Assembly: GCF_000315625.1 (NCBI RefSeq)
Contig: NW_005434468.1
Span: 1 to 57,795, forward strand
DNA length: 57,795 nucleotides
DNA from: Guillardia theta CCMP2712
Lineage: Eukaryota > Protista > Cryptophyta
Reading direction: 5' to 3'
Shown here: positions 10,201 through 13,816 of the stretch, piece by piece
How the letters are laid out: every line of letters starts with the position of its first letter
Position numbering within the stretch: position 1 is the first letter of the stretch
The notes under the pieces: generated by a model
Told to the model about the DNA's origin: nothing
The model's database searches: none
What the model saw: only the letters and a program-made list of their open reading frames with translations
Translations under genes and position numbers: made by a program

Positions 10201-10756
10201 CTCACCCTACCCGAGCACCTGTGAAACGATTGGATGTTATACCACCTCAAACACCCTTCACTCTCTCACCCTCATTTGATACTAGTGTCTCACTTATAAA
10301 ATCGAATCGTTCTCACCGGCATGATTCGAGTCCCCTGCCTCCCTCCTTCATTCGACTACCCCTACCCGCTATTTGCCTACAACCCGAAATCTCCACCTAC
10401 CCACACTCTGTCATTCAATATCAAGATTATGGGTGGGGCGGCTTCCACGCACTGCACAAAATGCCAGGCAAGGAGCAGCTGCGATGAGATGCTGTTACCT
10501 TCAGTTACATGCTTGATGATGGAGATGTTTCCTTTGCTCCCCCGCATCTGATCCTTCCATCATTCAACTCCTTTCTTGGCGGCTCCTTCACTTCCTCCCA
10601 ACACTTTTCTTGACCTCCTGGCTTGTGTTTCTCCAGATCCCGTTCCAACCTTATACCATCGACAGCACAAAATGCGTAATTTGAATATCTTCTAGTAGGC
10701 GTCATCTGACTGCGTGTGTTTTACGTTTTGCCGTGAATTGCCATGTTATTGTTCGG

Positions 10757-13700
10757 ATGGCGGTAAGCATCAGTCTGTGAAGCGTATGCTCGTTCAGGGG
10801 ACGATAAACTGACATTTTCTGTGTTTTTTTCGGTTTCTCATCGGATGGGTTGTTGGTTTGTCCGGTCAGATGGTAAGTGATGATAATGAAATATGCGGTC
10901 AGGGAACGATGGGACTGACATGTTTTGGGCAAATTCCTGGTTTTTCCTTGCTTGCATGGGTTAAATTCGTCTTCATAGGGAGTAAGTGTCATATCATATG
11001 ATGCGCTCAGGGGATGATTGTACTGACATTTATTTTGCAAATTCCTGGTTCTCCCTTGCTTACATGGATTGAATTCGTCTTCATAGAGCGTAAGTGTCAT
11101 ATCATATGATGCGGTCAGGGGATGATTTGCTGACATTTGATTTTGTATTTCTCTGTGTTTGGTGTGGGATGGATGGGTTGCTGGATCGGATAGCCGGTAA
11201 GTATCTTGATCACAACATGCGGTCAGGGGACGATTTGACTGACATGCAATTTGCAATTTGATCGGTTATTGCTTGGATGGATGAAACTTGGGCCTGATAG
11301 TATGTAAGTGACGCTTATGAAACATGCTCTCAGGGGATGATTGGACTGACATGTATTTTGCAAATTCCTGGTTTTTCCTTGCTTGCATGGATTAAATTCG
11401 TCTTCATAGGAAGTAAGTGTCATATCATATGATGCGGTCAGAGGATGATTGGACTGACATTTTCTTTTGTGTATATGTCGGTATTTGCTCGAATGTACTG
11501 TGGATGGCGCGGTATAGTCGGTAAGTGACGATGATGAAAGATGTGGTCAGGGGGCGATTGGACTGACATGTATTTTGCAAATTCCCGGGTTTTCCCTTGC
11601 TTGCATGGATTCAATTCGTCATCATAGGGAGTAAGTGTCATATCATATGATGCGGTCAGTGGACGATTCGAGCTGAAATATTACAGGCTACTTTCGATGC
11701 TGGAGCCGATGGGAAGTGTCAGACTTGCAAGAAGCTCGAGAAGGATCACTACACAGAATACAAGTTCTGCTACGTAAGCCTCTCAATGAGCCGCTCAGGG
11801 AATGTTTCGCTGACATTGGTTTTGCTTCTTGTCTGTGTTTGGTGTCGGATGGATGGGTTGCTGGATCGGATAGGGGGTAAGTATCTTGATCAAAATATGC
11901 GGTCAGGGGACGATAGGGACTGACATGTATTTTGCAAATTCCTGGTTTTTCCTTGCTTGCATGGATTAAATTCGTCATCATAGAAAGTAAGTGTCATATC
12001 ATATGATGCGGTCAGGGGACGATATGGCTGACATATAATCTTGGGTTTCTTTTGTTTTCGCTCGGATGGACTGGTGTGATGGAACTGGATAGTATGTAAG
12101 TAATATCTCGATTGAAACATGCGGTCGGTAGAGAGTGACATTCATTTTGCGTTTTTTGGTATGTCTTGATCAACGAATGGCAACATCTGGCATGGATCTG
12201 CTAGTGCTGCGTAAGAAATTGACATCATCACATATTTTCCTGCTGATCTGACCTTGTTTTGATTGCAATATGCAATGGGAAACTCACAGAATGTAAGTCA
12301 TCGATCATGTTTCAAAGCACATGGTCTGTAGAGGTTTTATTTGTATTGATTGGTTGACTCAGTGCGCCAAATCTAAAGGATGGTCCGGGTATGATGAGGT
12401 GTATGATTGGTTTGAGTGATGCGCTTGAGTCTCCTGTGACGTGTGCTGTTGGTAGCACGGGTGCAGACATTGCAAGAAACGGCTACAAGAGAAAGAAACG
12501 AAGAGTGGTGAACAGAATGCACAAGAACTGAAAATCAAGGAAGAGCAGCAGCGCAGAGAGAGGGAGGAGCAGCAGCGCAGAGAGAGGGAGGATCAGCAGC
12601 GCAGAGAGAGGGAGGAGCAGCAGCGCAGAGAGAGGGAGGAGCAGCAGCGCAGAGAGAGGGAGGAGCAGCAGCGCAGAGAGAGGGAGGAGCACGATGTTGC
12701 TTCCCAGGTCCGTTATGCCATGTCTTGTATCTCGATGATGTGTGAATCCCTTTTTTTTCTAAGTTGGGTCAAATCCCATCGTGGAACTTCGAGTCCTTCA
12801 CGGGCCTGCAGCAGATCGGCTCAGGCTCCTTCAAGCTCGTCTACAGGGCTCGGTGGCAGCAGCCGCATGGCAGCAGCGCTGACGTGGCAATCCAACGAAT
12901 CCGAGGCAGCGGACCCACTGGGAGGAGAGAAGAGTTCGAGCAGGAGGTGAAGATCTTCCACCAGCTGGGCCTTCACCCCAACCTCCTTCGCCTCCTCGCC
13001 ACCAGCATCGAGCCGAGCTCCGGCGACTACTGCCTGGTGACTGAGTTTGCTTCCAAAGGCTCTCTCGATGGGATCTTGTCCAACTTTGCCGAGGAGGAGA
13101 AGACGATGAGTCTGCTGGTGCAGCTGCAGGTGGCGAGGCAGATCTGCGACGGGATGGTGCAGCTGTCGCTGCATAAGGTTGTGCATCGGGACCTGGCGGC
13201 GAGGAACGTGCTTGTGTTCAGCCTGGACCCGGAGGATCACCTGGCTGTCAGCGTCAAGATCGCAGACTACGGGCTGTCCATCATGGCCTCGCGCGGGTAC
13301 GGGGAGAGTAGGGCCGGGAGCGTGAGCACGGCAGGCTCGACGGCTCGACCCGTGCGGTGGATGGCGCCGGAGAGCATGAGACGAAGAGAGTACTCGGAGA
13401 TGAGCGACGTGTGGGCGTTCGGGGTGACCATGTGGGAGGTCTGGACGTACGGAGAAGTGCCTTACTGGGCCATCACAGATGACGCTGAGGTGGGACCCAA
13501 GGTTGTAGATGGCGAGCGACTAGCGGCTCCTTCAGCATGTCCGCCTAAAGTTTATTTGATCATGCAAAAATGCTGGAAGGAGAAGAAGACCGAGCGACCA
13601 AGCTTCAGCCAGCTACAGAAGCTGCTTCAGGAGCAGTACGACGAAGCCGTCGAAGTTCGCGGCCAGCAATGCGTCGTCTGCATGGAGCGAAGAGCTGAAT

Positions 13701-13816
13701 GGGCGCTGATCCCCTGCGGTCACAAGTGTCTGTGTGAGGACTGCAAGGAGGGAGCGACGTCGAGGCCATGCCCGATGTGTCGCTCGAGCGCGACGAACAT
13801 CTACAAGATCTACTAG
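10757..13816 (+). CDS. Microexon-encoded N-terminus, Cys-rich region, coiled coil, tyrosine-kinase-like kinase and C-terminal RING finger (18 predicted exons, all introns phase 0)
   Basis: Exons: 10757-62, 10870-72, 10979-81, 11087-89, 11194-96, 11301-03, 11410-12, 11518-20, 11628-30, 11687-773, 11874-76, 11984-86, 12093-95, 12205-10, 12290-92, 12363-98, 12456-707, 12764-13816. They join as MAMGSPYESGATFDAGADGKCQTCKKLEKDHYTEYKFCYGKYCCNCAKSKGWSGYDEHGCRHCKKRLQEKE...(EEQQRRER)n...LGQIPSW... Kinase motifs: IGSGSF, HRDLAARN, DYG, PVRWMAPE, SDVWAFG. RING: CVVC...PCGHKCLC..C...CPMC. Confidence 0.8.
10763..12292 (+). other. Array of ~105-nt related introns separated by 3-nt microexons (appears as a ~108-bp tandem repeat)
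   Basis: Each unit reads AG|NNN|GTAAGT, then a GCGGTCAGGGG box, a CTGAC branch site and an AG-free tract to the next acceptor. Confidence 0.85.
12540..12690 (+). repeat. 24-bp coding tandem repeat (EEQQRRER)x~6
   Basis: gaggagcagcagcgcagagagagg repeats, in frame with the kinase. Confidence 0.9.

What the first reader, a model, noticed from the sequence alone, without database searches (positions are those of the whole stretch)
10763..12289. Dedicated intron architecture for microexon inclusion: doubled length, distant branch point, AG-exclusion zone
Seen: introns preceding microexons are 100-109 nt (79 nt for the last). Their CTGAC/GTGAC branch site is ~55-65 nt upstream of the acceptor (~40 nt in the last), with no AG dinucleotide in between in any of the 13 cases, even across diverged unit types. 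Introns preceding ordinary exons of the same gene are 56-70 nt (11631-86, 12293-362, 12399-455, 12708-63). A GGATGG/GCATGG motif recurs in the AG-free tract. Inference: selection maintains real splice signals, and moving the branch site away relieves the steric clash between U2 and the downstream U1 across a 3-nt exon.
Basis: partly seen in the sequence, partly recalled or inferred. Interest (0 to 1): 0.85.

Follow-up and report, generated by a model that had tools for sequence, protein, structure and literature searches.

The report
Distant-branch introns flanking one-codon exons
In the alga Guillardia theta, a kinase gene begins with a chain of exons only one codon long, and each intron before such an exon keeps its branch signal about 60 bases from the splice acceptor with no competing AG in between, an extreme form of an arrangement known from animal genes.

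Summary
All 13 introns at 10763-12289 that precede a 3-nt exon (one exon is 6 nt) are 100-109 nt long; the last is 79 nt. Each has CTGAC or GTGAC 58-67 nt (last: 39) from the acceptor and no AG after it.

The genome is Guillardia theta CCMP2712. The pattern is genome-wide: 155 adjacent pairs against 6 in the control. In 243 such introns the 5' site-to-branch distance is 45 nt and the branch-to-acceptor distance is 60 nt.

Neither composition nor ancestry explains the AG gap:
- The tails hold 44 AG against 570 expected.
- Recent copies show 0 AG-creating substitutions against 20 expected.
- AG is also avoided inside the codon (3 against 29 expected).
- The codons contain no stops (0 of 284; 18.5 expected).

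This is the known distant-branch-point / AG-exclusion design in a uniform, extreme form. It is not exclusive to microexons, because the long form also precedes a long exon in 8 paralogues. The short form, however, occurs only before long exons. The steric explanation is plausible but untested.

The scan has reported this architecture before on other DNA of the same genome.

The parts
10757..10762 (+). End of exon 1: ATG GCG, the only ATG in frame with the triplets (likely start codon). The ATG at 10743 is out of frame.
10763..10869 (+). Intron, 107 nt. GTAAGC donor; CTGAC with branch A at 10812 (58 nt from acceptor); AG-free tail; GGATGG at -27.
10870..10872 (+). One-codon exon ATG (Met)
10873..10978 (+). 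Intron, 106 nt. GTAAGT; CTGAC with A at 10918 (61 nt); AG-free tail; GCATGG at -25.
10979..10981 (+). One-codon exon GGA (Gly)
10982..11086 (+). Intron, 105 nt. GTAAGT; CTGAC with A at 11026 (61 nt); AG-free tail.
11087..11089 (+). One-codon exon AGC (Ser)
11090..11193 (+). Intron, 104 nt. GTAAGT; CTGAC with A at 11133 (61 nt); AG-free tail; GGATGG twice.
11194..11196 (+). One-codon exon CCG (Pro)
11197..11300 (+). Intron, 104 nt. GTAAGT; CTGAC with A at 11242 (59 nt); AG-free tail; GGATGG.
11301..11303 (+). One-codon exon TAT (Tyr)
11304..11409 (+). Intron, 106 nt. GTAAGT; CTGAC with A at 11349 (61 nt); AG-free tail; GCATGG.
11410..11412 (+). One-codon exon GAA (Glu)
11413..11517 (+). Intron, 105 nt. 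GTAAGT; CTGAC with A at 11457 (61 nt); AG-free tail; GGATGG.
11518..11520 (+). One-codon exon TCG (Ser)
11521..11627 (+). Intron, 107 nt. GTAAGT; CTGAC with A at 11566 (62 nt); AG-free tail; GCATGG.
11628..11630 (+). One-codon exon GGA (Gly)
11631..11686 (+). Short intron, 56 nt, before an ordinary exon. It has the same 5' half as the array introns, but a CTGAA branch-like site lies only about 12 nt from the acceptor.
11687..11773 (+). Ordinary 87-nt exon (29 codons, ATFDAGADGKCQTCKK...), homologous to an exon of paralogues.
11774..11873 (+). Intron, 100 nt, after an ordinary exon and before a one-codon exon. GTAAGC; CTGAC with A at 11813 (61 nt); AG-free tail; GGATGG twice.
11874..11876 (+). 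One-codon exon GGG (Gly)
11877..11983 (+). Intron, 107 nt. GTAAGT; CTGAC with A at 11923 (61 nt); AG-free tail; GCATGG.
11984..11986 (+). One-codon exon AAA (Lys)
11987..12092 (+). Intron, 106 nt. GTAAGT; CTGAC with A at 12031 (62 nt); AG-free tail; GGATGG.
12093..12095 (+). One-codon exon TAT (Tyr)
12096..12204 (+). Intron, 109 nt. GTAAGT; GTGAC with A at 12138 (67 nt); AG-free tail; GCATGG. Homologous to the long intron that precedes the long CCVC exon in paralogues.
12205..12210 (+). Two-codon exon TGCTGC (Cys-Cys)
12211..12289 (+). Intron, 79 nt. GTAAGA; CTGAC with A at 12251 (39 nt); AG-free tail.
12290..12292 (+). One-codon exon AAT (Asn). Together with TGCTGC and the next exon it rebuilds the C-C-x-C motif that paralogues encode in one exon.
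12293..12362 (+). Ordinary intron, 70 nt
12363..12398 (+). Ordinary 36-nt exon (CAKSKGWSGYDE)
12399..12455 (+). Ordinary intron, 57 nt. Weak donor GTGTAT; GTGAC 17 nt from the acceptor.
12456..12707 (+). Ordinary 252-nt exon. C-x2-C, then a coiled-coil-like EEQQRRER repeat (24-nt tandem repeat at 12539-12691).
12708..12763 (+). Ordinary intron, 56 nt. Weak donor GTCCGT.
12764..13813 (+). Last exon, 350 codons: PK_Tyr_Ser-Thr kinase domain plus a C-terminal RING finger.

Best explanation
These are genuine spliceosomal introns of the distant-branch-point / AG-exclusion-zone type. They are repeated as an intron-codon cassette that grew by tandem duplication.

Each intron has four parts:
- a perfect GTAAGT donor;
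- a near-invariant (A/G)CTGAC branch site about 45 nt downstream;
- a U-rich stretch directly after the branch site;
- a G-rich tail, without a pyrimidine tract, that often carries GGATGG about 26 nt from the acceptor.

Proposed mechanism (inferred): the spliceosome assembles on donor, branch site and U-tract without needing the acceptor AG. It then takes the first usable YAG about 60 nt downstream of the branch site.

Proposed reason for the distance (inferred): the acceptor AG, the codon and the next donor together occupy only about 11 nt, so factors on the acceptor side and U1 on the next donor cannot both sit there. Moving branch site and U-tract 60 nt upstream lets neighbouring introns be recognised without collision. 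The tail then serves as spacer, or stand-in 5' exon, for the spliceosome on the next intron.

Shown here: purifying selection keeps the tail, and the codon itself, free of AG.
For: - **Geometry.** In 243 introns from 28 fetched loci plus the window, median length is 105 nt. The 5' site-to-branch distance is 45 nt (IQR 44-47) and the branch-to-acceptor distance is 60 nt (IQR 58-61). CTRAY is present in 215 of 243.
- **Spacing across the whole genome.** Pairs of AGNNNGTAAGT separated by introns of 93-113 nt number 155, against 6 in the control. For 38-67 nt the count is 3 against 15; for 68-92 nt, 9 against 10; for 114-143 nt, 8 against 11.
- **AG depletion.** AG in the tails is 44 against 570 expected (0.08). 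GA is 1.38 of expectation, and AG in the 5' half is 0.75.
- **AG positions match the published rules of the scanning model** (PMC1431707). AG is tolerated at +2 to +10 after the branch A (22 cases). In the middle of the tail there are only 4 AG, none of them YAG. Within 12 nt of the acceptor there are 18 GAG, 1 AAG and 1 CAG.
- **Substitution test.** 0 AG-creating changes against 20.3 expected (P = 1.5e-9); the GA mirror class shows 16 against 12.4.
- **AG inside the codon.** NAG triplets number 3 against 28.7 expected (P = 4e-10). K/E/Q codon choice is reversed (AAA 6: AAG 1) relative to the long exons of the same genes (AAG 273: AAA 32).
- **Coding.** 0 stops in 284 triplets against 18.5 expected; the other two frames behave as in permutations. 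The C-C-x-C motif is rebuilt only if TGCTGC, AAT and the next exon are joined.
- **Diverged arrays.** Arrays on C116, C12, C75, C60 and C56 show random-level identity to the window units yet keep the same geometry.
- **Short form.** It occurs only before long exons: the window intron at 11631-11686, and L044, L049, L038, L040 and L059.
- **Another organism.** A metagenome contig from a related organism, at most 87% identical to this genome, has the same arrays.
- **Size comparison.** The modal G. theta intron is 47 nt (PMC6260743).
Against:
- The same long architecture precedes a long exon in 8 closely related paralogues, and a 95-nt variant does so in a ninth. Length is therefore not strictly tied to exon size.
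- All arrays may descend from one cassette, so uniform length is partly inheritance.
- Three possible short-intron cases were listed genome-wide (for example C22:534723-534798, 62 nt) and could not be fetched.
- The steric rationale rests on general knowledge of spliceosome footprints, not on a test.
Confidence: 0.7

Rival explanations
1. The tail is long because it must house an intronic splicing enhancer (the GGATGG/GCATGG element about 26 nt from the acceptor, or the U-rich tract) bound by a dedicated factor. This would parallel the enhancers upstream of animal neural microexons. Distance as such would not matter.
For: GGATGG is the most recurrent 6-mer: 89 of 236 tails, against about 5 expected from composition. 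It sits at a fixed place, 21-27 nt from the acceptor. It is present in 47% of main-family tails and 18% of diverged tails, and G[GC]ATGG in 11 of 13 tails in the window. Known distant-branch exons usually carry regulatory elements between branch point and exon (PMC1431707).
Against: Half of the tails lack the hexamer, including two in the window, yet they keep the same length and AG exclusion. In diverged arrays the motif is rare while the geometry persists. This reading does not exclude the spacing explanation.
Confidence: 0.2
2. Pure inheritance: the architecture is only what the ancestral cassette happened to look like. It was copied by tandem duplication and gene conversion and has no functional link to the size of the downstream exon.
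For: The units form a 108-nt tandem repeat and a family of at least 155 pairs. The long form also sits before a long exon in 8-9 paralogues.
Against: - Median pairwise tail identity is 0.56, against a random level of 0.48, yet the length stays at 58-61 nt.
- AG-creating substitutions are missing while other changes of the same type are common.
- Arrays with no residual similarity keep the geometry.
- Shortened derivatives exist, but only before long exons.
Confidence: 0.1
3. CTGAC is not the branch site. The real branch point lies near the acceptor, and CTGAC is a protein-binding or structural element, for example paired with the upstream GGTCAG box.
For: GGTCAG, about 20 nt upstream, is the reverse complement of CTGAC.
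Against: - No yUnAy-like motif is conserved in the last 30 nt, which are G-rich.
- AG is common up to the motif and absent after it.
- The same motif sits 12-23 nt from the acceptor in the short introns of the same genes.
- There is no excess folding energy: mean z = +0.07 for donor-to-branch and +0.19 for the tail.
- About half of the units have GCTCAG without any compensating change.
Confidence: 0.05
4. The region is a non-coding repeat inside one long intron or the 5' UTR, and the triplets are never part of the mRNA.
For: Public gene models of sister genes omit the triplets. No transcript-derived protein carrying them was found.
Against: - There are 0 stops in 284 triplets in one frame only.
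- Spacers are almost always exactly 3 nt (a few are 6 nt), while the introns vary by indels.
- The C-C-x-C motif is restored across the last two small exons.
- Earlier follow-ups on sister loci report RNA support (s1-429680, s1-431587); I did not check that here.
Confidence: 0.03

Closest known systems
Distant branch point exons with AG-dinucleotide exclusion zones (Gooding et al. 2006, PMC1431707)
   Same: The branch site and U-rich tract sit at the 5' end of a long AG-free zone, and the acceptor is the first AG found by a linear search. AGs within about 12-15 nt of the branch site are bypassed. Closely spaced AGs at the acceptor compete according to the preceding base. All of these rules are visible here.
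   Different: The human cases are rare, scattered, usually alternative exons of normal size, with zones of 100-400 nt. Here the zone is a uniform 60 nt or so, repeated hundreds of times in tandem, in front of exons of one codon, in a cryptophyte alga whose modal intron is 47 nt.
[quoted passage not shown] 2026 preprint, PMC12871342)
   Same: The predicted branch point lies farther from the acceptor before microexons (45 against 34 nt). The region is unstructured, and the authors propose that the extra distance eases steric constraints. The tails here also show no excess structure.
   Different: The vertebrate shift is modest and statistical, the exons are 3-27 nt and isolated, and inclusion depends on SRRM4 and UGC motifs. 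Here the shift is about 12 to 60 nt, nearly invariant, with no pyrimidine tract next to the acceptor, and the exons are chained.
Recursive splicing at ratchet points (Drosophila zero-nucleotide exons, bioRxiv 10.1101/006163)
   Same: An acceptor is followed almost at once by a strong GTAAGT donor, so stepwise removal of successive intron segments is conceivable.
   Different: Ratchet points have AG|GTAAGT with nothing retained. Here three bases stay in the mRNA at each step, and NAG|GT junctions, which would create a true ratchet site, are avoided (3 against 29 expected).
Schistosome micro-exon genes (MEGs; PMC10526429)
   Same: Runs of very short symmetric exons (3-81 bp) encode variable parts of proteins.
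   Different: MEG exons are mostly longer than one codon and are separated by long introns (up to 5 kb). The genes encode secreted parasite proteins. No uniform intron cassette or distant-branch design is described.

Membership tests
Distant-branch-point / AG-exclusion-zone introns | Extended AG-free zone immediately upstream of the exon, beyond what composition gives | tested here: met
   240 of 243 introns have a zone of at least 42 nt (median 71) when AGs within 12 nt of the acceptor are ignored. AG is 0.08 of expectation. No AG-creating substitutions against 20.3 expected.
Distant-branch-point / AG-exclusion-zone introns | Consensus branch sequence at the 5' end of the zone, with an adjacent pyrimidine/U-rich tract | tested here: met
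   (A/G)CTGAC in 181 of 236 and CTRAY in 215 of 243. Its columns carry 1.4-2.0 bits. The branch-proximal third of the tail is 45-51% T, while the acceptor-proximal third is 35-39% G.
Distant-branch-point / AG-exclusion-zone introns | AGs very close to the branch site are bypassed; close AGs at the acceptor compete by the preceding base | tested here: met
   22 AGs lie at +2 to +10 after the branch A. Near the acceptor there are 18 GAG, 1 AAG and 1 CAG. No YAG lies in between.
Distant-branch-point / AG-exclusion-zone introns | Branch point mapped experimentally (lariat) at the distant site; first step independent of the AG | not testable with these tools
No lariat data.
Recursive-splicing ratchet points | Juxtaposed acceptor and donor (AG|GTAAGT) leaving a zero-nucleotide exon | tested here: not met
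   The spacer is 3 nt (12 cases) or 6 nt (1 case) in the window. NAG triplets, which would make AG|GT, are depleted: 3 against 28.7 expected.
Introner-like elements (dispersed near-identical introns) | Copies inserted singly into many unrelated genes | tested here: not met
   Nearly all 56 BLAST matches of one unit fall at the same roughly 20 loci, which hold tandem runs. At least 16 fetched loci share homologous flanking exons: first exon, or the TFxxD and CCVC exons.
SRRM4/eMIC-dependent animal microexons | UGC-containing enhancer between pyrimidine tract and AG, and an eMIC-domain regulator | not tested
   Only the resemblance in geometry was assessed. No search for an eMIC-like protein was made.

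The most novel reading that the evidence does not exclude
The cassette array may be a splicing-based diversity generator. Every exon is one codon, every intron is phase 0, and all carry the same strong signals with an AG-independent first step. Any donor could therefore be joined to any later acceptor without breaking the frame. Regulated or stochastic skipping would yield many length and sequence variants of a Gly/Tyr/Arg/Leu/Ala/Asp/Trp-rich loop at the head of immune-type ROCO-TIR receptors and this kinase-RING protein. The 60-nt distant-branch design would be the feature that makes both inclusion and controlled skipping possible.
Probability: 0.15. Interest if true: 0.9.

Novelty: new variant of a known kind. 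Interest (0 to 1): 0.7.

Why it matters
An exon of three bases cannot be recognised by exon definition, so how a spliceosome handles one is an open mechanistic question. This genome supplies hundreds of natural replicates of one solution, with built-in controls: the same intron cassette appears in short form before long exons and in long form before one-codon exons.

That makes several rules directly testable:
- the minimal spacing between neighbouring spliceosomes;
- AG-independent assembly;
- the rule for choosing the acceptor by scanning.

It also matters for annotation. The public Guillardia theta gene models miss these exons, so the N-termini of a receptor and kinase family are wrong in the databases.

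Tried and rejected
- **RNA reads.** The look-up of sequencing runs listed runs, including one raw RNA run.
  - Locus L017, which genome search returned on its own and which overlaps those places, was never used.
  - For one protein search I used the database protein P0001, a paralogue, restricted to its residues 1-200.
- **Transcript-derived proteins carrying the codons.**
  - The search of protein representatives found only models that lack the N-terminal head encoded by the small exons.
  - Three homologous-protein searches did the same. The public GUITHDRAFT models, an MMETSP protein and a Hanusia phi protein are all uninformative.
  - The look-up of encoding contigs on the MMETSP protein found nothing.
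- **Ordinary-intron baseline from open-frame continuity.** It was too strict and gave only 7 candidates. The GTAAGT-anchored survey was dominated by the arrays. I used the published mode of 47 nt instead.
- **RNA structure.** No excess stability in the tail or the 5' half. The hairpin idea is not supported.
- **Frame 1 as a second reading frame behind the conserved upstream ATG.** Not supported: 1 stop against 2.8 in permutations.
Full report
**What is in the window**

Between 10757 and 12292 on the + strand there are twelve sites of the form AG|NNN|GTAAGT and one AG|TGCTGC|GTAAGA. Each site closes an intron-like unit that opens with GTAAG.
- The 13 units are 100-109 nt long; the last is 79 nt.
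- Each carries CTGAC (GTGAC in one) with its A 58-67 nt from the acceptor, or 39 nt in the last.
- None has an AG between that motif and the acceptor.
- The four introns of the same gene that precede ordinary exons are 56, 70, 57 and 56 nt.
- G[GC]ATGG occurs in 11 of the 13 tails.

Two small corrections apply: one 'microexon' is 6 nt, and the donor after exon 11687-11773 is at 11774.

Tandem Repeats Finder sees the units as a 108-nt repeat, so the 13 cases are not independent. The shuffle product of 10^-15.6 overstates the significance.

**Organism and gene**

The window is contig C206 of an 87,145,349-base, 669-contig assembly. That matches Guillardia theta CCMP2712 (87.1 Mb, 669 scaffolds; PMC6260743). 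Protein hits are GUITHDRAFT models.

Joining the exons in the triplet frame gives an open frame reading MAMGSPYESG ATFDAGADGKCQTCKK...FCY GKY CC N CAKSKGW.... It continues into a repeat-rich exon and a last exon with a PK_Tyr_Ser-Thr kinase domain and a RING finger. The only in-frame ATG of exon 1 is at 10757; the ATG at 10743 is out of frame.

**The pattern is genome-wide**
- One unit finds 56 matches at about 20 loci.
- Adjacent AGNNNGTAAGT sites separated by introns of 93-113 nt occur 155 times, against 6 for the reversed-pattern control.
- Other spacings are at or below the control: 38-67 nt, 3 against 15; 68-92 nt, 9 against 10; 114-143 nt, 8 against 11.

From 28 fetched loci plus the window I collected 42 chains, 284 triplets and 243 introns lying between two triplets.
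- Median intron length is 105 nt.
- CTRAY is present in 215 of 243, mostly GCTGAC or ACTGAC.
- The donor-to-branch distance is 45 nt (IQR 44-47).
- The branch-to-acceptor distance is 60 nt (IQR 58-61).
- Donor, branch motif and acceptor are the only strongly conserved columns.

The published modal intron of this genome is 47 nt, with a mean of 106 nt. The cassette intron thus equals an ordinary short intron plus about 50 extra bases, and all of the extra bases lie between branch site and acceptor.

**The triplets behave as codons**
- None of the 284 is a stop, against 18.5 expected from position-specific base frequencies (P about 5e-9).
- The two other frames of the concatenated triplets have as many stops as permutations do.
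- In at least 10 paralogues with a long exon at this position, that one exon starts with a C-C-x-C motif (C-C-V-C in 8 ROCO-type genes). In the window the same motif is rebuilt only by joining TGCTGC, AAT and the exon at 12363.
- I could not obtain RNA evidence for this locus.
- Three protein searches and one representative search returned only models that lack the N-terminal head encoded by the small exons.
- Earlier follow-ups of this scan on sister loci report that reads join the codons in order (s1-429680, s1-431587, s1-431659, s1-429691). I treat that as a lead, not as support.

**Is the AG-free zone more than composition and ancestry?** Yes.
- Pooled tails hold 44 AG against 570 expected (0.08). 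GA is 1.38 of expectation, and AG in the 5' half of the same introns is 0.75.
- The tails have diverged almost to random level: median pairwise identity is 0.56 against 0.48 for shuffles.
- Among clusters at least 80% alike, 0 of 152 possible AG-creating single substitutions are observed. The rates of the same substitution types elsewhere predict 20.3 (P = 1.5e-9). GA-creating changes are seen 16 times against 12.4 expected. Other cluster thresholds give the same result.
- The placement of the few AGs follows the published scanning rules (PMC1431707). There are 22 at +2 to +10 after the branch A. Only four lie in the middle, none of them YAG. Within 12 nt of the acceptor there are 18 GAG, 1 AAG and 1 CAG.
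- The exclusion extends into the codon itself. NAG triplets number 3 against 28.7 expected (P = 4e-10). Lys/Glu/Gln use AAA/GAA/CAA (12 against 3), whereas the long exons of the same genes prefer AAG/GAG/CAG (686 against 149). This avoids the otherwise ideal donor context NAG|GTAAGT. The simplest reading is that a second AG three bases after the acceptor would compete with it.

**Anatomy of the tail**
- The third next to the branch site is U-rich (45-51% T).
- The third next to the acceptor is G-rich (35-39% G) and has no pyrimidine tract.
- The acceptor context is mostly (G/C)ATAG.
- GGATGG is the most recurrent hexamer, in 89 of 236 tails, centred 26 nt from the acceptor. It occurs in 47% of main-family tails and 18% of diverged tails.
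- Folding energies are no lower than for shuffles: mean z is +0.19 for the tail and +0.07 for the 5' half. A structure that shortens the effective distance, as in yeast, is therefore not indicated.

**Is the design tied to the size of the next exon?**

In favour:
- The first intron of an array, which follows an ordinary exon but precedes a codon exon, is long (100 and 107 nt in the window; 93-96 nt in paralogues).
- The intron that leaves an array for an ordinary exon is short, with a nearby branch motif, in six places. These are the window at 11631-11686 (56 nt, about 12 nt), L044 (57 nt, 12), L049 (59 nt, 12), L038 (69 nt, 21), L040 (53 nt, 14) and the metagenome contig L059 (63 nt, 23).
- No short form occurs among the 243 introns before a codon exon.
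- Arrays with no detectable similarity to the window units (C116, C12, C75, C60, C56) keep distances of 42-47 and 53-66 nt.

Against a strict link:
- In 8 closely related ROCO paralogues the long form (105-107 nt, branch motif 61-63 nt from the acceptor) precedes an exon of several hundred codons (368 to over 800). A ninth has a 95-nt variant there.
- The long form is therefore permitted before any exon, while the short form is seen only before long ones.

**Outside this assembly**

An ENA metagenome contig (ERZ930071, k127_130648; locus L059) carries a homologous ROCO gene whose upstream part is at most 87% identical to anything in this genome. It has four cassette introns of 100-107 nt, with the motif 58-63 nt from the acceptor and AG-free tails. 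These are followed by a 63-nt intron before the long exon. The design is therefore conserved in at least one other organism or strain.

**Mechanism**

Shown:
- conserved signals;
- a fixed geometry;
- selection against AG from about 10 nt after the motif through the codon;
- coding constraint on the triplets.

Inferred:
- CTGAC is the branch site.
- The spliceosome assembles on donor, branch site and the adjacent U-tract without the acceptor AG.
- The acceptor is then the first usable YAG.
- The 60-nt distance keeps U2 and its partners on one intron away from U1, and later the active spliceosome, on the donor three bases past the acceptor. The tail acts as a stand-in for the missing 5' exon.

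The same steric idea was put forward this year for vertebrate neural microexons, where the predicted shift is 34 to 45 nt (PMC12871342). An enhancer role for GGATGG is a compatible alternative.

**Novelty**

Distant branch points with AG-exclusion zones are known, and so is a link between microexons and a longer branch-to-acceptor distance. New here are the extreme and uniform form, the tandem chaining before one-codon exons, the extension of AG avoidance into the codon, and the occurrence in a cryptophyte. The paper library holds no paper containing both 'Guillardia' and 'microexon'. The scan itself has already reported this architecture on other pieces of the same genome.

Noticed in passing
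window 10743-10762, and the homologous exon 1 of L033, L042, L043, L046, L051-L054: An ATG 20 nt before the first donor is conserved in the paralogues but is out of frame with the triplets and the main ORF. Most paralogues have no in-frame ATG in exon 1. The window gained one (GGAAG to GGATG, ATG at 10757). The upstream ATG may start a short overlapping ORF, or the true starts may lie elsewhere.
   Followed up: partly
window units, e.g. 10898-10913, 11004-11027: A conserved GGTCAG/GCTCAG box about 20 nt upstream of CTGAC is its reverse complement. There is no excess folding energy and no compensating changes, so a hairpin is not supported. Its role is unknown.
   Followed up: partly
all arrays (284 triplets): The encoded residues are dominated by Gly 13%, Tyr 12%, Arg 11%, Leu 10%, Ala 8%, Asp 7% and Trp 6%. 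Lys, Glu and Gln are scarce, partly because their usual codons end in AG.
   Followed up: partly
window outside 10700-12400: The perfect donor hexamer GTAAGT is rare elsewhere in the window (6 on both strands, against 26 expected from composition). The later introns of this gene have weak donors (GTGTAT, GTCCGT). Array donors are GTAAGT in about 85% of cases.
   Followed up: partly
L034, L040, L049 (C33, C92, C221): Public models GUITHDRAFT_108245, _116126 and _121310 start at an internal Met or at a spurious short exon, and omit the codon arrays and the Cys-rich head.
   Followed up: yes
L059 (ENA ERZ930071 k127_130648): A metagenome contig from a related but different organism or strain carries the same cassette arrays in front of a ROCO gene.
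   Followed up: partly
G000 C22:534723-534886; C33:47720-48425; C112:104262-104325: Candidate one-codon exons lie behind introns of only about 50-62 nt, possible exceptions to the long-intron rule. They could not be fetched.
   Followed up: no
window 12539-12691: A 24-nt tandem repeat, 6.4 copies at 97% identity, encodes EEQQRRER repeats between the Cys-rich head and the kinase.
   Followed up: no
They lie in the kinase domain. They were left out of every later search.
   Followed up: no
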